A stretch of 64,000 nucleotides of DNA, taken from assembly GCA_964106645.2 (NCBI GenBank), contig OZ067040.1, one strand, 5' to 3'. The first letter of the stretch is position 1. Each line of letters begins with the position of its first letter. The translations under genes and the position numbers were made by a program. Below are positions 1 to 60,830 of the stretch, piece by piece. A model generated the notes under the pieces. The model saw only the letters and a program-made list of their open reading frames with translations. It did no database searches and had not been told where the DNA came from. The stretch comes from Podarcis pityusensis (Eukaryota).

Positions 1-1375
1 TTCATGCAAGTGGGACTGGGCCTTCAGGGCACCCTCTCACAAGCAATTCCAATTAACAGAGATGTCAAGCAAGGCTGTATACTGGTATTCTTCCCATTTA
101 ATTACTATATAAATAATCTCATTCCTGATATGGCATCCCCATCCTTCTTTGTCCCCACCCTTGGGAATTGTAAAATGCCAATTTTGCTCTACACCAATGA
201 CTTAGCTTTGTTATCCCAGAATAAAAGTGGACTTAGAAGGATGCTGGTTAAATTTGGACAGCTGTGTAAAAAAGAGCATCCAGAAATTAACTACAATAAA
301 ACCAAGGTCACTGTATTTGGCAAGAAGACTACTAAGTCCAGGTAGACTCTAGATGGTCACACCCTATAGACGGTCACACCCAGATTTAAATATCTAGGAT
401 TACTTATCAATGGGAAGTCATCATGGAAATCCCGTCTGGAAGCAATTAAGCTAATATCTGGCCATTCTACTGGGCAGCTATATAGGTTCTTCCATTCAAA
501 GGGTAGACAGTTAACCAACCCAGCTATCAAGATCTTTGTCTCTAAAATCATCGCTCAAATGCTTTATGGGGCTGAGATATGGGAAATTGGTGTCAAATCT
601 GAAATGGAAGTCCTACAAAATAAATTTATGAGGCAGATTTGGGGGCTTCCCTGTGGGACACCAGCAGCCCACCTCACAGCCTAGTTGGGCCTTCCCTCGC
701 TAGCAGCCAGAATTGATCTAGTCTACCTGAGATACTGGCACAGGCTAAATGCCTTGGAAGATCATACTCTTACTAAGTTCTGCTGGTTAGAGCAACTAAG
801 GACATGGAGCTGGGCACAAAAGTGCCAAGATAAGTTTAGGGTTTATAATCTCCAAATGGAGAACTACTTAGCCCTTAGCCCATGTGACCTCAGAAATTGG
901 ATTTTTGATCAGGATGCCAACCAAGACAGAGTATCCGTTATTGCTGCCTGATACTCTACTTGGTACCCCCAAATTAAGACCAATCACTCAAGGCCCCATT
1001 ACCTTGAGACTCTGACTTTTTCATAACTATGTAGGGACTTTGTAGAGCTAAGATTTCAACAGATGCCCTCAGCATATTTAGAGGGGAATTCTTAATTGGC
1101 TTCCAGGTCGATCCGCACAGGAAGTGACAGTTGAATTCCTAGCAGATAAATATCTATATATGACACACCAGGTAGCCAAATTTGCACTGGCAGCCAAGAA
1201 GCTCCATTCCAGCTATGTGAATGCACTCCAATTTTAAGTCTTAATGTTGTAAATTACTTTTATATTGTAAACTGCTACAGGCTACGTGTATGATTTTTGA
1301 TGGAAGTTTCCTTTTATTCTCTGTCGTCCATTGTAAAGCCCTTTGACTACATACAATAAATATTGATTGATTGAC
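1..1375 (+). mobile_element. Non-LTR retrotransposon, 3' part (RT domain to tail), decayed; RTE-X-like clade tentative
   Basis: ORF 4-345 has decayed RT motifs DVKQGCIL..FNYYINNL and ILLYTNDLALL (cf. GVRQGC.LSP.LFN and LLYADD). Downstream remnants: FKYLG, MLYGAEIW, ELRFQQMPSAYLEG, THQVAKFALAAKK. Ends with AATAAA and (ATTG)n at ~1354-1375. Confidence 0.85.
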
Positions 1376-4408: not shown

Positions 4409-4616
4409 ATTTATTTCATAGTCCACCTTTTCTTCAAGAAGTTCAAGTTGGTTCTCCCCTTCGTTACTTGACCCTCACAACAGCCCTGTGAGCTAGGTTA
4501 GGCTGGGAGACAGTAACTGGGCCAAGATCATCCCAGTGAGCTCCATAGTTGAGTGGGGATTTGAACCCTGGTCTTCCATGTCCTAGGGCAGCACTCTAAC
4601 CACTACACCATGCTGG
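4409..4616 (-). mobile_element. Squam3/MIR-like tRNA-derived SINE
   Basis: Reverse complement CCAGCATGGTGTAGTGGTTAGAGTG..GGGTTCAAATCCCCACTC (Pol III A/B boxes), CORE-like body, AT-rich tail. Confidence 0.8.
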
Positions 4617-14352: not shown

Positions 14353-14715
14353 TAAAGGTAAAGGTAAAGGTACCCCTGCCCATACGGGCCAGTCGTGTCC
14401 GACTCTAGGGTTGTGCGCCCATCTCACTTAAGAGGCCGGGGCCAGCGCTGTCCGGAGACACTTCCGGGTCACGTGGCCAGCGTGATGAAGCTGCTCTGGC
14501 GAGCCAGCACCAGCGCAGCACACGGAAACGCCGTTTACCTTCCCACTATAAAGCGGTACCTATTTATCTACTTGCCCTTAGGGGTGATTTCGAACTGCTA
14601 GGTGGGCAGGAGCTGGGACCGAAAGATGGGAGCTCACCCCGCCGCGGGGATTCGAACCTCCGACCATATGATCGGCAAATCCTAGGCACTTTACCCACAG
14701 CGCCACCCGCGTCCC
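14353..14715 (-). mobile_element. Sauria SINE, full length
   Basis: Reverse complement starts GGGACGCGGGTGGCGCTGTGGGT, B box GGTTCGAATCC, (ACCTTT)n tail. TAACAATA on both flanks; CpG-rich. Confidence 0.95.
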
Positions 14716-47697: not shown

Positions 47698-47958
47698 GAG
47701 CCAGTGTGGTGTAGTGGTTAAGAGTGGTGGACTTGTAATCTGGGGAACCGGGTTTGATTCCCCGCTCCTCCACATGCAGCTGCTGGGTGACCTTGGGCCA
47801 GTCACACTTCTTTGAAGTCTCTCAGCCCCACTCACCTCACAGAGTGTTTGTTGTGGGGGAGGAAGGGAAAGGAGAATGTTAGCCGCTTTGAGACTCCTTA
47901 AAGGGAGTGAAAGGCAGGATATCAAATCCAAACTCTTCTCTTCTTCTCTTCTTCTTCT
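47698..47958 (+). mobile_element. Squam3-type SINE, full length
   Basis: GAGCCAGTGTGGTGTAGTGGTTAAGAG head, B box GGTTTGATTCC, GCCGCTTTGAGACTCC 3' region, (CTT)n tail. Confidence 0.9.
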
Positions 47959-48030: not shown

Positions 48031-48358
48031 TTAAACCACAGAGCCTAGGACTTGCTGATCAGAAGGTTGGTGGTTCGAATCCCTGTGACGGGGTGAGCTC
48101 CCATTGCTCAGTCCCTGCTCCTGCCAACCTAGCAGTTCGAAAGCACGTCAAAGTTCAAGTAGATAAGTAGGTACCACTCCGGCGGGAAGGTAAATGGCGT
48201 TTCCGTGTGCTGCTCTGGTTCGCCCGAAGCGGCTTAATCATGCTGGCCACATGACCCGGAAGCTGTATGCCAGCTTCCTCGGCAGATAAAGCAAGATGAG
48301 TGCCGCAACCCCAGTTGGCCACGACTGGACCTAATGGTCAGGGATCCCTTTACCTTTA
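48031..48358 (+). mobile_element. Sauria SINE, 5'-truncated
   Basis: GGTTCGAATCCC..CTAGCAGTTCGAAAGCA..CATGACCCGGAAG..CCCTTTACCTTTA. Confidence 0.93.
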
Positions 48359-53294: not shown

Positions 53295-55506
53295 TACTTA
53301 CTTCTTTCCAATGAAAACCAATGGAACTTAAGAATATTTTCCTTTGACTTAACACTATGAATTATGGGTACTGATATTTGTTGAGAACTTTCTAGAAGTG
53401 TCTCAAAACATTTTTTGGGGGGGAGTTTAATAATACTTCATATGGATCCCCAAATCCTGTAACACCAAGGCCATCCTTACAGGTGCTGGAATGTATGTGA
53501 TCCAGCAGCAGCAGCTCCCAAGTGTTCCACCTGAGTCCTACAGTCATTCTACTCCCTAGTGACCTCTGTTCTACACCAGCATTGCCCATTTCAGAGGAGA
53601 GATGACGTTGGTATGAAAAGTGCTGCATGAGATACAGATCTCCACATTAAGGAAGTGGAGGAAAGATAATTCCAGAAGGAGGCCATTTCAGTTGGCATTT
53701 GATAATTAAGTTGACATGTGGAGTGACCTAAATAGAACATTCTAAATGATAAAAAAAAATCCTATTATTTCCCAGCAATGTTCACTCAACCTGGAGTGGA
53801 CATTACTCAGTTTAGCAATTGTTTACATATATAATTTTTGTGAGTAAATTTAAATTGCCCCAACTTTATATTGGGCACCTGGAAAACTGGAATAAACTAG
53901 TAGAACTTGATGTCATCGTTTCCACTGAAAGTACCACATGTACAATGGCTGCTTATTGTAGACTCAGTTAAATGGCCAGTGCTTCCCACCTTTAATTATC
54001 TTTGCCATAACTTGAAAATGAGGATTTGTGTTTGCTTTGATCACCATTCTCAAATTCCTGTATAGTACTGCTTCTGAGTTTCACGCTCTTGAATAGGTGA
54101 GAGCTGTGAATATCCCTGGGCAGTAAATGATATTTTCTCAAGGATTTGTGATTGGCATGAATTGTCTAACAGCAGACACTTAGAAACAATCTCTTTTGTT
54201 GTCACTTTTAAGAGCTCATGAATACTTTAAGGCACACGCCATGTTATGTGAGGAATCTGGCTCTTCCGCTTGCTGAACTGAAGACCCCTTGGAGCCAAAA
54301 GGAGTGACTTCATCAAACGAAGGAAAGTAGAAACTCCATTAGCTGTAGCAGCAAGGCTTATAAATTATTTCTGAGCCTCCCGATGAAGGACAGGCCATAA
54401 AATACTTCGAGCAAAGTGCTTGATTCCAAACGAGCACATACAAAGATGTGCCAGTGCGATGCATACTGTTTCAGCAGATGTGCATTTAGCTGCACCATTA
54501 TCTTCAAAGCGCATGTTTGTGGGGTGGTGGTGGGTTATGCTGAAGAGCTATGTAGGTGACAACTTGATTGAGAAATGCCAGCTGTGTGGCTTGGACAGGA
54601 ACTCTTTATATACAAAAGAAGCTACTTAGACTGTTTGGCTTATTTTGTTGCACTGAAAGGAAAAACTCCTTGAGCTGCCAAAATTATCTGATGAAAATAC
54701 TTGGTAGGGGAAATTCATGCGGGAAAATCTTCTTTTTCCTACAAAAGCATTTTTTTATATATAAAAGTGCTAAGGCTACACAGCTGGAGTGAGATTTTTG
54801 TCAAAAAATAGTCTGCACTTTCTTCTCGGAGTCTGCATACTGGCAGATATTGCTGATCGTCAGGTATTACTCTCCCTAACTAGAAGTTTAATTTTGTCAC
54901 TATAGTTTTAACTTGGTTTCATGGCTGACATACCAGTTATTCTTGCTGTCATGATTTCAAATAAGGAAAGCAAGTACCAGTGGGAAAGGTATAATATTCC
55001 CCCCCCCCCCGTCATAATTCTGCTTGTTGGGTCAGCTATCGGCTAGAGCAACAACTTTTTTTTTTAATGAGGCTTGTTCATGTGGCTTTAAGAATGGACA
55101 GAAACCCCAAAATGAAGCAGGTGAAGTTTTCACCACCATACCAGGAAACCTATGTCCGTGATGACAGGGGTGCACGGCTGGGGCCCGACCATCACCTGCT
55201 AAAAGTTTGCCTAGCAGGATGTTGTTAAAACCACAGTAGAAAAGGCCAGGAAGCAAAGGTACAGCAGGGGAAGTTTTTTTAAAAAAAGATTTTAATGCTT
55301 TATCTAAGTTTTAATTTTTTTAAAAAATATATCCTATTTTGCTCTCTTCTAACAAGAACAACCAGCTCAGAGCTCTTCAGAACTCCTTGGACAGCATTCT
55401 AGACATCCACAGATTGCAGCTTGACAACTGAGTGCTAGGCCAAAGTTTCAAACAACATACAAGCAAGAACATACACCACTTAGCCACTTCTTAATTATTT
55501 TGATGT

Positions 55507-56631
55507 GGGGGGGCCAGCATTGGAAGATGGCCGACAATAACATCTCTCTGACCCATACGAGGTAATTAAGAGGTTGCTATGGGAAGTATGCAGTCTTCCT
55601 ACCCCCCCAAGGAGATGGGGGGGCTGCCTTGCCAGCGGTGTCCACAATGCACCCCCAGATTCGAGGTCTGGGGGCGCCGGTCACTTGGCACGAGCCCTCG
55701 ATGCGGTCAGCTCTTCCTGACGCCGATTCCAATCAGCGCGTGCTGGTTAGCTTCAGCTCGGAATTATAATTGGAATGAAGCTGAAGCACATACATCAAGT
55801 AACGCTCGAGAGATAAGACTGCTGATTAATGGATCTCTGTGACCGGGAGTGACGGACGGATAAGTAAATCTTCTGATGAATCACCATTAAGAGACTGTAT
55901 GTTTGGAATGAAGGGGGGGTGGAGGAAAAAACCTTTTTTCTTTGTACTATGTGATATTAATAACCCTTCACCCCAGAAAGAAACAAGATCATTGCGTTTT
56001 ACTAATCACAAGCAGGAAGTTAAGAACTGTGTGGGATGGATTATAGCTAGAAAGGATTGGTAAACAATGAGAACGGAGGAAAATTCTATGACGCAGTCAA
56101 AAAATGGCGTCTCGCCAAGACAGGCTTGCCGGAGAAAGAAGGACAGGGGGAGGAGAATCAGGACCATTGGAATGAGAAGGATTGCTGGAATGTAATTTTG
56201 ACCTGACAGAGCCTCCTGATATACTGGGCAAGTCTGAGAAAAGTAAAGGACGGACCAAAGATTATTTTTTTTTTTATGGAAGCGAGGAACAGCGGCTGTC
56301 CCTGAGCGATATGATCTTTGGAGAGTACAAAACCCACATAGAGCATGTTTGTTTCCAATCTGCTTGTGAAAATTATCAGAGATTTCAAAGAAAGGAATAT
56401 ACGATAACAACGAGAAGATGAAGAAAGTAATAAAGGACTATCTGGATTGAACTGGATAGAACTGTTTAATTAATGCAGCAATATAAGTGATGTTTGGACT
56501 CGTCCGGAGCTTGATGTATGGGTACCCCCAACAAAATTTAAAATTCCGCTGTATAATTTGGAACTAATGTCATTTGGATAATGTGATGTGATTGGCCTGT
56601 TAATAAAAATTATTTTTTAAAAAAATATATA
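55507..56631 (+). mobile_element. Full-length ~1.1-kb non-autonomous L1-type retroelement, copy 1
   Basis: Perfect 15-bp TSD TAATTATTTTGATGT (55492-55506, 56632-56646). 5' G-run plus AAGATGGCCG, AATAAA and A/T tail. Homologous to 57602-58753. Confidence 0.88.
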
Positions 56632-57601
56632 TAATTATTTTGATGTAAGAAAGAGCAACACACACACACACACACTTGCTCTTCCCCTCAAGAACATGAA
56701 GAAAAGTACAAACCTCTTACTTTCCCCTCCCTCTCAAACATCCCTGCATCTATTTGCCCGAAACTTGGCAGATTTAGTCCACTCTGAAGTGGGTAGGCAT
56801 AGCTTCCCAGATATGGGTGGGTTCTTGGTTTACATAGTTAGTAGACTGCAATGCTATACTCATTTACTTGGGAGTAAGACAGTTGAACTCAGTGTATGTC
56901 AGTCTCCTTAGCACCACTTCTCTGGCCAGATTTATGTGTTTATAGCTTGCAATTCTGCCCACTTCCTTTGTATTTATTATGCAATTTATCATCATGGCAA
57001 TTCCGGCCTCATCTAGTGAATTTCCCTAGATGTTCATCATAAGTAGCTTAAACTCACTTTAGCTATTTAAGCATTATTAAAATAATGGACAGAGATACTA
57101 ATACACAACACAGTAAACAGCAGTAGATACTAATGGGAAGAAATCATTGAAATAATTACATTGGTGTGTAGCCGATTAATTTCAAAACCTTCACTCTGTA
57201 TCTGAAATTAAATAGAACAGAATTATATTGAAAAGTGGGGTAGGGAGTTTAAACTGATTTGCTTTAACAGTGCCACTAAAAGATTATGCTTTTGTGCAGG
57301 TGCCTTCATGTGAACGTCAGGTGTTATGAAACATTTTCTGCAGGTTTTCCCTATGATGAGATAGCATCATATCCAATGGCAGAAGGCAGAGCTGATGTTG
57401 CAGTCTGGTTTCAGTCATTTCCCATATCTCATGTGACAAGGAAAGCTTGGAGAATGTTGGGGGAATACCATACCAGCTCTTTAGCCACACAAGGATCATT
57501 TGAGGAGAATACAAAACTTGGCCTCTCCCGGGAGGGATGGAGACTTAGTCTCAAGTAGGCAGATGTGCTTAGTCACAGGCAGGCATTTGGGTGGTTTTCT
57601 A

Positions 57602-58753
57602 TTTTTTAAAAAAATAATTTTTATTAACATGCCAATCAAATCACATTAATTCCAAATCACATTAATCCCAAATTATACAGCCAAATTTTTAAAATTTTAT
57701 TGGGGGTACCCATACTTCGAGCTCTGAAAGGGATCCAAACATCACTCTTGTTGCTGCTTTAATTACACAGTTCTGTCCAGTTCTGTCCATATAGTCTCTT
57801 TGTTATTTTCCTCATCTTCTTGTTGTTATCATATATTCCTTTCTTTGTGATCTCTGATAATCTTCACAAGTGGGTTGAAAACAAACATATCCTGTGTGGA
57901 TTTTACACTCTCCAAGAGCCATATCACATAAAGGACAGACGCCATTTCCATACCTCCGCAAATAACATTCCCACAGTCTGTCCGTTGATTTCCACAGGCC
58001 TGCGAATCTATATCTCAGGGGGCCCTGCCAGGTCAAATCCACATTCTGATAACCATACATTCACATTCCAATGACCATGGTCCTCCTCCCCCTCGTCCTC
58101 CTGTGGGCAGGCCTGTCTTAACGAATCTCCATTTGAAACTGCGTCACAAAGCTTTCTTTCCATCCGATGTTCCCACCAGTCCTCTCTTTGATCAGTAATT
58201 CATTTCCACACAGTTCTTAATCTCCTGCTTGTGATTAGTAATTTGCAACGATTCTTTCTCTCTGGGAGGGAGGATTATTGGGTACTCACATAAGACAAAA
58301 AAAGAGAAAAGTTTTTCCTCCCCCCCCTTTCTGTTCCGCTCCGACATACCAATCTTTTAATGATGAGTCTTCACTTGATTTATTGTCCAGCCCATCGCTC
58401 CGCTCACAGAGATCCCATTAATCAGCAGTCTTTACTCCCGATCTTCACTTGAAGTATGTGCATTTGCTTCTATTTCCAATTATATATTTCGAGCTGATGC
58501 AAACCAGTGCGTGATTCGGAGACAGCGTCCGGAAGAGCCGACTCCACCTGAGGGCTTCGTGCCTAGTGTCCTTGTCACCCCCTTCTTTCGAATCTGGGGG
58601 TGAATTATGGACACAGCAGGCAAGGCAGTACCCCCCATTCCCTTGGGGGGCAGGGGAGGCTGCATACTCCCATATCAGCCTCTTAATTACCTCGTGTGGG
58701 TCAGAGAGATGTTATTGTCGGCCATCTTCCAATGCGCCCCCTGGTGGCCCCCC
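57602..58753 (-). mobile_element. Full-length ~1.15-kb non-autonomous L1-type retroelement, copy 2
   Basis: Perfect 18-bp TSD CATTTGGGTGGTTTTCTA (57584-57601, 58754-58771). Same 5' and 3' structure as copy 1. Confidence 0.88.
58734..58747 (-). promoter_or_regulatory. CTCF consensus core
   Basis: Minus strand reads CCACCAGGGGGCGC, an exact match to the canonical core. Binding is not shown. Confidence 0.7.
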
Positions 58754-60830
58754 CATTTGGGTGGTTTTCTAATACCGTGAAGTCTTCTTCAGCACCCTTC
58801 CTCTCTTCATAATGCCTTCCCACTGCCCCTACAGAGTAGATTTTGACCAGTCACATTTCCTTTGGGTGGGGTGTGTGTGGCTATATAGGAATTAGGGGGA
58901 ATCCCCTGATTGGCCTTTGAGACTCCTCTTTTTCACCTACGTCACACTGTGATATTTTGTTATTGTTCTGATGATTTGTCCTGTTTGCAATACAGTGCAG
59001 GTAGGTGAGGAAATTAAGATCTTTATCACTTTAGGTGGCATTGGGTTAAAAGGTGATATTGAGTCACTTTCCATAGCCTTTAGCTTAGGGGACATTGTGA
59101 GTGTCCCTTATGCCTGGTGTGCATGACTTGGTGAATACTGGACAGTGGGACAGGTTTTTTTTTTTTTTTTTTAGTAAGGAGGGATAATTTTCTTTCATTT
59201 CTTGGCTGTGGAGCCACATCATCTGGCTGTGTTAACATCCCTACAGGACAAATTAATTCAACCCACCTGTCCATACTCGCACCATCTCATTATTCTTTGG
59301 CAGATCAACTAGTTATATTGTAAATAATTATAACCTTTCTATCAATTACTCTGTCTCTTGAGTCTTCTTCCTGGGTGGGATGAGAAACAGCTGCGAATGG
59401 GTTAATGAGAGGACAGTGGTGCATTTACATGACTTGTAAAAAAGAGGGGAGAAACTTAGCATGCAGTGGTATTTTTCATAGGGAACAGTTAGGGTTAGTT
59501 GCCCACCTTCCCAAAGCCTGCCTGGTTTTAGAAAGGAGGCAGCAGGACTCCTGGATCCTGTCAGAGTCCGGGAACCCCCTTCCCAAGGCCTAGGAAGCTT
59601 GTGCCCAGCTTATGGGGGAAGGCACAATGCTCTGAGGGAGTCAGAGCACCCTCCTGCCACTGGCCCGACGGTGCAGGAAAAGGGAGAGAACAACTAAGGA
59701 CCATTGAAATAAATGCCGACAAACTCTCTGGCTGTGTTTTCCTGGAACTGCTGCAGGCAGTTAGGAAGAGAAGTGCTTTCTCAACCCCTAAGAAGCTGCA
59801 AAACTTCTTCCCTTGCCTGATTGTGCCTGCTTTCAGGAATACGCCCCCCCCCCCCCCGTGCTTCAGTCCTCATTCCCCTGCCTATATGACATCTAAGTCA
59901 ATCTATACAACCTGAAGAACCATGCAGTACAGGTATTTCTCAACTGCATCAGTTCAGCATGGAAGTGCAGAGTTGGATATTTGAGGTTCCCTTAGAAAAA
60001 CAGGCAAGTGGCGTCCTAGGGATCACAGTACTCTTAGAAACCTTTTCTTTGCCCGTAACAAGGAGTTATGTGGAAAGTGTTCCTCTATTATCCTGTCTCC
60101 CACTTGAAGCCTGAAATGGTATATCCTAGCTAGAGTTTTGCTCGTGTTACTTGTCTCACAGAAGGTTCTCAGGTCAAAAAGATCTAGAATGAGATGGACT
60201 CTCATCACCTCACTGTGACTGATGGTGACATAACAATTTCACTTTGGAGGCCTAGCCTATCACATCTGAGTGTGATGTGTTGGCAGAATATCATTGTTTA
60301 AGAATTCTAACATATTGTGTGCATGACTTGCTCAAGTGTCAGTGACCAGATTTAATTTAGAAGAGTAGGGGTCTAAGTAGAAGATGAAGGCCTTGGCTTA
60401 AGATTTCTGTGTGCCACTCAATTTGAAAAATACTGTGATTGATCACATACTTTTTTCTAGTAATAAAAATCAGCCATCCTCCCAATAGCAAACTCAGGTG
60501 GTGAATGACAACAGTACTGAAACCAAAAAAAGGGCCAGTGAGAAATAAGATGGTGGTATCAATATGCTCAGGAAACTGTACATAAATATTTTTTATGTCA
60601 CAACATGCATTTAAAAACCTTAAGGGTGTACCTTCATCCAAGAAGGAAGCTTAATGAGGACTGAGCATATTCAACAGAAGAATATTGATTGATGGTGATT
60701 AAAGAAGAACAGAAAGGAAGGATAGAATGGAGTAACTTGGAGAAAGCACTGCTTGGGAATGAGAATTTATGTTAGGAGGTGAGGTTGCACTGCAACATTT
60801 GATTGTAGCTCCCTCTTGGTTTTCCTAAAC

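What the first reader, a model, noticed from the sequence alone, without database searches (positions are those of the whole stretch)
55492..58771. Convergent pair of full-length ~1.1-kb non-autonomous L1-type retroelements from two diverged subfamilies
Seen: two homologous elements lie tail-to-tail 970 bp apart, each with its own perfect TSD (15 and 18 bp), a 5' G-run, AAGATGGCCG, AATAAA and an A/T tail. The first ~60 bp after the G-run and the last ~110 bp are very similar, while the interiors are visibly diverged with many indels. There is no RT, endonuclease or ORF1-like sequence and no Pol III A/B boxes. Known: a G-run plus AAGATGGCCG is the YY1 start motif of mammalian L1 5' UTRs, and TSDs of this length indicate L1-type target-primed insertion. 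Inference: a Pol II-driven parasite of lizard L1, neither a SINE nor a 5'-truncated LINE, with two lineages that were both active recently and are constrained at the ends.
Basis: partly seen in the sequence, partly recalled or inferred. Interest (0 to 1): 0.8.

Follow-up and report, generated by a model that had tools for sequence, protein, structure and literature searches.

The report
Two non-coding L1-type retroposon insertions
Two separate, recent insertions of a 1.1-kb protein-less retroelement that carries its own start and poly(A) signals and was probably inserted by a LINE enzyme (most likely L1); the finding is real, but it is an ordinary example of a known kind.

Summary
Element e1 (55507-56631, +) and element e2 (57602-58753, -) are homologous end to end (77% identity). 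They lie tail-to-tail, 970 bp apart. Each is bracketed by its own perfect duplication of the target site (15 and 18 bp). Each starts with a G-run and has an AAGATGGCCG box 18-26 nt in. Each ends with AATAAA, a T-run and a short A-run.

Neither element has LINE protein remnants, a tRNA/7SL/5S-type head or A/B boxes, and the reading frames they share show no coding constraint. The perfect duplications and CpG content 2-3 times background mean both copies are young. Most of their 23% divergence therefore predates insertion, which implies two old source lineages. The head (91-96%) and the last ~290 nt (87%) are much better conserved than the interior (71.5%; p = 2e-10).

The best reading is a non-coding, polyadenylated, LINE-dependent retroposon with a promoter box that lies inside the transcript. 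L1 as the driver, Pol II/YY1 use, copy number and curation status could not be tested: the window holds no L1 and no host-genome or read data could be reached. Other first-stage notes on this genome report similar retroposons (s1-711398, s1-711340, s1-711431); I did not verify them. This is a known kind, and the elements are probably a new or uncurated member of it.

The parts
55492..55506 (.). 5' copy of the 15-bp target-site duplication of e1
   Evidence: 100% identical to 56632-56646 (D10); borders the homology block exactly
55507..56631 (+). Element e1, full-length copy, 1125 bp
   Evidence: End-to-end alignment with e2 at 77% identity. Sense strand is purine-rich (A 31.6%, G 25.7%). CpG o/e 0.67 against 0.22 background.
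55507..55584 (+). Conserved head of e1: G7 run (55507-55513), AAGATGGCCG box (55524-55533, 18 nt from the 5' end), 12-codon mini-ORF (55527-55565) ending in a GAG|GTAATT donor-like motif
   Evidence: 68 nt are 96% identical to e2 (I2). The box occurs only in the two heads in 64 kb. Sequence read.
56345..56631 (+). Conserved 3' block of e1 with AATAAA (56602-56607), T6 (56613-56618), A7 (56619-56625), TATATA (56626-56631)
   Evidence: 87% identity to e2 against 71.5% for the interior. Alignment. No stable fold, z +1.4.
56632..56646 (.). 3' copy of the 15-bp TSD of e1
   Evidence: D10
57584..57601 (.). TSD copy next to the 3' (A-run) end of e2, 18 bp
   Evidence: 100% identical to 58754-58771 (D5)
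57602..58753 (-). Element e2, full-length copy, 1152 bp
   Evidence: CpG o/e 0.49
57602..57890 (-). Conserved 3' block of e2 with AATAAA (57620-57625), T7 (57608-57614), A6 (57602-57607)
58668..58753 (-). Conserved head of e2: G6 run (58748-58753), extra CCACCAGGGGGCGC (58734-58747), AAGATGGCCG box (58719-58728, 26 nt from the 5' end), same 12-codon mini-ORF (58687-58725)
   Evidence: (I2)
58754..58771 (.). TSD copy next to the 5' (G-run) end of e2, 18 bp
   Evidence: D5

Best explanation
e1 and e2 are two independent, recent insertions of full-length polyadenylated transcripts. They belong to a non-coding, non-autonomous retroposon of the class of LINE-dependent retroposons without a small-RNA Pol III head, and they come from two source lineages that split long before either insertion.

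Proposed mechanism:
1. A source copy is transcribed from its first bases (the G-run). The conserved head lies inside the transcript. It includes a YY1/TISU-type AAGATGGCC box at about +18 to +35, so the start signal travels with every new copy.
2. The transcript is cleaved and polyadenylated about 11-17 nt after the terminal AATAAA.
3. A LINE ORF2-type endonuclease/reverse transcriptase supplied in trans, most likely L1, nicks an AT-rich target (T|TA...). It primes on the A-tail and copies the RNA to its 5' end, creating TSDs of 15-18 bp.

Shown here: the insertion hallmarks, the absence of coding capacity and of a Pol III head, the youth of both copies, the deep split between them, and the conservation of the ends.

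Inferred: Pol II/YY1 transcription, L1 as the driver, and multi-copy family status.
For: - Perfect 15- and 18-bp TSDs sit exactly at the homology borders.
- AATAAA plus an A-run lies at the 3' end and a G-run at the 5' end in both copies.
- The YY1-type box occurs only in the two heads of the window, in the same orientation and at a similar offset. TISU/YY1 elements act downstream of the start site, up to about +30 and in one orientation only (PMC2518114). Mammalian L1s start with G2-6...CAAGATGGC (PMC5381506).
- No LINE domains in 65 translated pieces or in 8 ORFs.
- No protein homologues. Only two marginal chance hits appeared in the exhaustive search.
- The shared ORF shows the same pN/pS in non-ORF frames.
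- No tRNA or Rfam hit and no A/B boxes inside the elements. Internal T6-T11 runs would stop Pol III.
- Age: zero changes in 66 TSD sites give at most 4.5% divergence per copy since insertion (95% bound). CpG o/e is 0.49-0.67 against 0.22 background. At least about 14 of the 23 points of divergence therefore predate insertion.
- Ends 88% against interior 71.5%, Fisher p = 2e-10, unchanged when CpG transitions are removed.
- L2-type insertions give only 1-9 bp TSDs and simple-repeat tails (PMC4476161). All vertebrate L1s end in AATAAA plus poly(A) (PMC5381506).
Against: - Only two copies were available. Copy number and family structure are unknown. The three similar notes from this genome are unverified titles.
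- No L1 sequence was at hand, so neither dependence on L1 nor derivation from it could be tested. The only RT-bearing LINE in the window has a microsatellite tail.
- The A-tails are very short (6-7 nt) for young L1-type events.
- The target sites (tct|TAATTA, tat|TAGAAAA) match TT|AAAA only loosely.
- The conserved ends could reflect exchange between lineages rather than constraint.
Confidence: 0.7

Rival explanations
1. L1-derived deletion derivative. The element is what remains of an autonomous lizard L1 after loss of both ORFs (5' UTR start joined to 3' UTR), like RIME from ingi or the internally deleted Vingi derivatives. Its ends would then be homologous to a living L1, and the L1 machinery would recognise them as its own.
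For: The head resembles L1 starts: a G-run plus a YY1 box as in mammals. e2 has GGGGGCGCAT and e1 has GGGGGCCAGCAT, against the Anolis clade-2 start GGGNGCTGCGCATGC; ATGGCC compares with the clade-1 ...N8ATGGCG (PMC5381506; sequence). The sense strand is A/purine-rich, as in L1. The 3' end is T-rich and repeated, followed by AATAAA, as described for lizard L1 3' UTRs. The best-conserved parts are exactly the two ends.
Against: The motif matches span only 10-15 nt of G-rich sequence, so chance is not excluded. There is no trace of ORF1, EN or RT in any frame. No L1 was available for a real alignment.
Confidence: 0.25
2. Ordinary processed retrocopies of two paralogous host genes, either lncRNA genes or exon 1 plus intron 1 isoforms ending at an intronic poly(A) site. 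The copies themselves would not propagate.
For: A TISU-type box with an ATG in good context, a 12-codon ORF and a conserved GAG|GTAATT donor-like site together look like the first exon and first intron boundary of a housekeeping-type gene (PMC2518114). Retrocopies of host mRNAs are reported in this genome by another unverified note (s1-711389).
Against: Two deeply diverged sources each gave a recent, full-length insertion within 1 kb of the other. Further ~1.2-kb retroposons with a 'YY1 head' are noted elsewhere in the genome (unverified). No protein homologue was found for any frame. The selective conservation of head and tail fits elements that must stay transcribable and mobilisable.
Confidence: 0.12
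3. Mobilised by a LINE clade other than L1 that is present in lizards (Vingi, R4, RTE or L2).
For: Several LINE clades in Anolis can copy foreign RNAs: U6 chimeras occur with L1, L2 and RTE (PMC4476161). The A-run is short and preceded by a conserved T-run, which could be a specific 3' recognition end rather than a free poly(A) tail.
Against: L2, CR1 and RTE ends are simple repeats with short or no TSDs (the LINE at window 1-1375 ends in a TTGA repeat). Here there is AATAAA, an A-run and TSDs of 15-18 bp. The 3' end shows no stable stem-loop.
Confidence: 0.1
4. Inverted segmental duplication or assembly artefact.
For: The two copies form a large inverted repeat.
Against: They are only 77% identical, have different TSDs, share no flanking homology, and are separated by 970 bp of unrelated sequence.
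Confidence: 0.01

Closest known systems
SVA / LAVA-type L1-dependent retroposons of hominoids (Dfam class 'LINE-dependent retroposon lacking a small-RNA Pol III promoter'; the class name is from my own knowledge)
   Same: Non-coding and kilobase-sized. Ends in AATAAA plus an A-tail and has variable TSDs of about 15 bp. No Pol III head. Depends on an enzyme supplied in trans (SVA: PMC3287187, PMC5753468).
   Different: No hexamer repeat, VNTR, Alu-like or LTR-derived modules (one search shows only 10-16-nt micro-duplications). This element carries a defined G-run/YY1-type start, whereas SVA lacks a defined internal promoter. The host is a lizard.
Start module of the mammalian L1 5' UTR (G2-6...CAAGATGGCGGA, YY1 site)
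   Same: A G-run at the very 5' end followed within 20-30 nt by AAGATGGC in the sense orientation (PMC5381506).
   Different: No homology beyond the motif and no ORFs. The published Anolis L1 starts use other consensus sequences (PMC5381506).
HAL1 (half-L1) and internally deleted LINE derivatives (RIME/ingi, Vingi derivatives; the latter two from my own knowledge)
   Same: Non-autonomous elements of about 0.5-2 kb that keep LINE-type ends and are mobilised in trans. Several lineages can arise (PMC5753468 for HAL1).
   Different: HAL1 keeps ORF1, and no ORF1 is present here. Homology of the ends to a LINE could not be tested.
TISU element of vertebrate housekeeping genes
   Same: AAGATGGC with the ATG close to the 5' end, in one orientation only, within about +30 of the start, and bound by YY1 (PMC2518114).
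   Different: Here the ATG opens only a 12-codon ORF. In e2 the box is at +26 to +35. Function was not tested.

Membership tests
LINE(L1)-dependent retroposon without Pol III head | Variable-length target-site duplications of about 7-20 bp flanking the full copy | tested here: met
   Perfect 15- and 18-bp TSDs at the homology borders
LINE(L1)-dependent retroposon without Pol III head | Poly(A) signal and A-tail at the 3' end | tested here: met
   AATAAA 11-12 nt before T6-7 and then A6-7 in both copies. The tails are unusually short.
LINE(L1)-dependent retroposon without Pol III head | No RT, EN or ORF1 coding capacity | tested here: met
   Pfam on 65 pieces and 8 ORFs found no LINE domain. 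No homologues. No codon-level constraint.
LINE(L1)-dependent retroposon without Pol III head | No tRNA/7SL/5S head or A/B boxes | tested here: met
   ARAGORN found 0 and Rfam found 0. No box matches inside the elements. Internal T6-T11 runs are present.
LINE(L1)-dependent retroposon without Pol III head | L1-type nick site (TT|AAAA) | tested here: inconclusive
   tct|TAATTA and tat|TAGAAAA are AT-rich but only loose matches, and n = 2
LINE(L1)-dependent retroposon without Pol III head | Multi-copy dispersed family | tested here: inconclusive
   Two copies in 64 kb and none else in the window. Similar elements are noted elsewhere only as unverified titles. No host-genome search was possible.
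LINE(L1)-dependent retroposon without Pol III head | Mobilisation by L1 proteins in trans | not testable with these tools
   Needs a cell-based assay
L1-derived deletion derivative (HAL1 / RIME type) | Sequence homology of the 5' and/or 3' end to an autonomous L1 of the same genome | not testable with these tools
   There is no L1 in the window. Only 10-15-nt motif resemblance to published start consensus sequences.
L1-derived deletion derivative (HAL1 / RIME type) | Retained ORF1 (HAL1 only) | tested here: not met
   No Transposase_22 or L1 ORF1 domain hit
SINE | Internal Pol III promoter from tRNA, 7SL or 5S; length under about 600 bp | tested here: not met
   length 1125-1152 bp
SVA-like composite retroposon | VNTR or hexamer repeat modules | tested here: not met
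   TRF finds only 2-copy micro-duplications of 10-16 nt
Processed pseudogene of a host gene | Intron-bearing parent locus; copies trace to one gene | not testable with these tools
   No host genome or transcriptome was reachable. Two sources with 23% divergence argue against a single parent.

The most novel reading that the evidence does not exclude
A lizard lineage of Pol II-transcribed, non-coding retroposons has evolved, independently of mammalian L1, the same solution for carrying a promoter inside the transcript: a G-run start with a downstream YY1/TISU box. It persists as several concurrently active, deeply diverged lineages, held together only by selection on about 70 nt of head and about 290 nt of tail. 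One lineage (e2) has added a perfect CTCF core next to the YY1 box, so it would seed paired CTCF/YY1 sites wherever it lands.
Probability: 0.2. Interest if true: 0.6.

Novelty: new member of a known kind. Interest (0 to 1): 0.35.

Why it matters
If the family is confirmed genome-wide, it would be a compact non-mammalian counterpart of SVA-type elements. It would offer a 1.1-kb natural substrate for asking what a reptile L1 needs from a passenger RNA. It would also be an independent case of a YY1-type start module carried inside a transcript. Its insertions would serve as young polymorphic markers and as possible carriers of YY1 and CTCF sites. On present evidence it is a well-formed but ordinary example of LINE-dependent retroposition. 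It may already sit in a repeat library under an 'unknown' or 'L1' label.

Tried and rejected
2. Protein route to other copies or a parent gene:
   - The e2 sense 82-aa ORF and the e1 antisense 134-aa ORF gave no homologues.
   - An exact look-up of the 134-aa ORF found it not on record.
   - The exhaustive search with the 87-aa e1 ORF gave two marginal hits (E 5e-4 and 1e-3). One is a PKD-repeat protein. The other is a translated 83-aa tandem repeat on an ENA contig that also carries Ig-domain exons. Neither shows DNA similarity to e1 or e2, so both were rejected as chance.
3. The PIGBOS1-like Pfam hit on the e2 ORF (E 0.071, below the family cutoff) is at chance level among 65 queries, and no hydrophobic segment precedes it. 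Rejected.
4. Exact-pattern scans with the conserved head, an interior block and a tail block against metagenome and viral contigs returned 0. A literal motif search of the paper library returned 0.
5. Coding hypothesis for the shared terminal ORF: pN/pS is 0.42, but it is 0.46-0.50 in frames that contain stops, and differences are spread evenly over codon positions (7/7/8). Rejected.
6. Structured-RNA hypothesis for the ends: z-scores range from -1.2 to +1.4, and only 2 compensated pairs were seen with two sequences. No support.
7. CpG decay as the cause of the faster-diverging interior: removing CpG transitions leaves the contrast unchanged. Rejected.
8. TTTTTTAAAAAA as a family tail signature: the other four sites in the window have unrelated contexts. 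Not informative.
9. The scan's own index searched by sequence returned nothing. The operators state that such a blank means nothing.
Full report
**Observation.** The region holds two homologous elements in opposite orientation: e1 at 55507-56631 (+, 1125 bp) and e2 at 57602-58753 (-, 1152 bp).
- e1 is bracketed by a perfect 15-bp direct repeat (55492-55506 and 56632-56646).
- e2 is bracketed by a perfect 18-bp direct repeat (57584-57601 and 58754-58771) (families D10 and D5).
- Only about 0.009 exact repeats of 15 nt or more are expected by chance in 4.3 kb.
- Both repeats sit exactly where the homology between e1 and e2 begins and ends.
- The bodies are 970 bp apart, tail to tail. The flanks share no homology, and no third copy or fragment exists in the 64-kb window.

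This excludes an inverted duplication or a twin-priming product. These are two separate insertions made by target-primed reverse transcription.

**Anatomy.**
- Both copies begin with a G-run (G7 in e1, G6 in e2).
- AAGATGGCCG lies 18 nt (e1) or 26 nt (e2) from the 5' end. These are the only two matches in the window (0.03 expected).
- The ATG inside the box opens an identical 12-codon mini-ORF. Its stop lies within a GAG|GTAATT motif that resembles a splice donor.
- e2 has 9-12 extra bases at the tip that create CCACCAGGGGGCGC. This is the only match in the window to a CTCF-core pattern.
- Both copies end with AATAAA, then 11-12 nt that include a T6-7 run, then A6-7. e1 adds TATATA.
- The sense strand is rich in purines and A.
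- Tandem repeats are limited to two-copy micro-duplications of 10-16 nt.

**What it is not.**
- No coding LINE remnant. All 65 stop-to-stop pieces of 25 aa or more, on both strands of both copies, gave no RT, endonuclease or L1 ORF1 domain at E<=1.
- No protein homologues. Two word-indexed searches were blank. The exhaustive search with the 87-aa e1 ORF gave only two marginal hits. They proved to be a PKD-repeat protein and a translated tandem repeat, neither with any DNA similarity.
- No coding constraint. The one frame left open in both copies has pN/pS of 0.42, but frames with stops give 0.46-0.50, and substitutions are spread evenly over codon positions.
- No Pol III head. ARAGORN and Rfam find nothing, and no A- or B-box match lies inside either element. 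Internal T6-T11 runs would terminate Pol III.

The elements are therefore neither SINEs nor truncated LINEs.

**Age and lineages.** Global identity is 77%, with 63 gap columns. Zero changes in 66 TSD sites bound the divergence since insertion at 4.5% or less per copy (joint 95% bound). CpG o/e is 0.67 in e1 and 0.49 in e2, against 0.22 for the rest of the window and 0.13 for the spacer between them. So the copies have not yet decayed. At most about 9 of the 23 points of divergence can have arisen after insertion. The rest separates two sources that were both still producing copies recently.

**Ends against interior.**
- The first 100 alignment columns are 91% identical, and 68 nt of them are 96% identical (I2).
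- The last ~290 columns are 87% identical.
- The interior is 71.5% identical.
- Ends against interior gives Fisher p = 2e-10, and the result is the same when CpG transitions are removed.
- No stable RNA fold explains the conservation (z from -1.2 to +1.4).

Either the ends are under selection in the source lineages (start signal at the head, processing or recognition at the tail), or the ends have been exchanged between lineages. Two copies cannot separate these.

**Mechanism (inferred).** A retroposon survives only if its start signal lies inside the transcript.
- The conserved head fits a downstream, orientation-specific YY1/TISU-type element. TISU lies within about +30 of the start, has the AAGATGG core and binds YY1 (PMC2518114).
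- Almost all mammalian L1s start with G2-6...CAAGATGGCGGA, and the YY1 site there fixes the initiation point (PMC5381506).
- The terminal AATAAA followed by an A-run at the expected cleavage distance indicates a polyadenylated Pol II-type RNA.
- TSDs of 15-18 bp, AT-rich T|TA targets and the AATAAA/A-tail end match L1-type insertion. L2-type events give TSDs of 1-9 bp and simple-repeat tails (PMC4476161). All vertebrate L1s end in AATAAA plus poly(A) (PMC5381506).
- L1 is the likeliest driver but was not tested. The window's only RT-bearing LINE (1 to about 1375) has a TTGA-repeat tail and no similarity to e1 or e2.
- The very short A-tails and the conserved T-run before them are unusual for L1-type events and are unexplained.

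**Comparison with known elements.**
- The general kind is established: a non-coding, LINE-dependent retroposon without a Pol III head. SVA and LAVA are L1-mobilised examples (PMC3287187, PMC5753468). HAL1 and internally deleted LINE derivatives are related precedents.
- This element lacks SVA's repeat modules and HAL1's ORF1.
- Published Anolis L1 starts are GACTTCCGGTG-N8-ATGGCG (clade 1) and GGGNGCTGCGCATGC (clade 2) (PMC5381506). The tips GGGGGCGCAT in e2 and GGGGGCCAGCAT in e1, plus ATGGCC, resemble parts of both, but only over 10-15 nt. That is a lead towards an L1-derived head, not a demonstration.
- I found no paper describing such a family in squamates. Repbase and Dfam were not available, so prior curation cannot be excluded.

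**Limits.**
- Pattern scans of metagenome and viral collections were blank, as expected for a vertebrate repeat.
- Other first-stage notes on this genome list a 1.2-kb non-coding retroposon with a 'YY1 head' and a 17-bp TSD (s1-711398). They also list two further candidate L1-dependent retroposons (s1-711340, s1-711431) and an intact L1 (s1-711350). These are unverified titles, used only as leads.

**Verdict.** L1 dependence, Pol II/YY1 use and family status remain inference. It is a new or uncurated member of a known kind, of moderate interest.

Noticed in passing
window 58734-58747 (-): The 5' tip of e2 carries CCACCAGGGGGCGC, the only match in 64 kb to the CTCF-core pattern CCASYAGRKGGCRS (0.02 expected). 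It lies 5 nt upstream of the YY1-type box. e1 lacks it because of a 9-12-nt indel. This agrees with note s1-711329. Binding was not tested.
   Followed up: partly
window 55527-55565 (+) and 58687-58725 (-): An identical 12-codon mini-ORF (MADNNISLTHTR) starts at the ATG of the YY1/TISU-type box and stops inside a conserved GAG|GTAATT donor-like motif. The single nucleotide difference between the copies is synonymous (CAT/CAC). It could be a relic of a first exon and intron boundary in the ancestral transcript.
   Followed up: partly
window 1-1375 (+): The 3' part of a LINE runs in from the window edge. Pfam RVT_1 hits 1-342 at E 6e-7. It ends in ...AATAAATATTGATTGATTGA, a simple-repeat tail of the L2/CR1 kind. 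It shows no similarity to e1 or e2.
   Followed up: partly
window 4546-4610, 14648-14705, 47707-47761, 48072-48082: Exact or near-exact B-box matches (GGTTCGAATCC) lie next to A-box-like matches. These are probably tRNA-derived SINE heads. None lies in or next to the two elements.
   Followed up: no
window 55493-55501 vs 56608-56616: The e1 target-site duplication shares 9 nt (AATTATTTT) with the element's own 3' end just before the A-run. This may be chance in AT-rich DNA or microhomology at the target. e2 shows nothing similar.
   Followed up: no
window 22526, 55275, 55316, 56613, 57602, 62143: The palindromic TTTTTTAAAAAA occurs 6 times (0.08 expected from shuffles). Two sites are the element tails and two lie 180-230 bp upstream of e1. 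The contexts are otherwise unrelated. Shuffles do not preserve homopolymer runs, so the excess is weak evidence.
   Followed up: partly
window 56658-56675: An (AC)9 microsatellite lies 12 bp after the 3' TSD of e1. It belongs to the target locus, not to the element.
   Followed up: no
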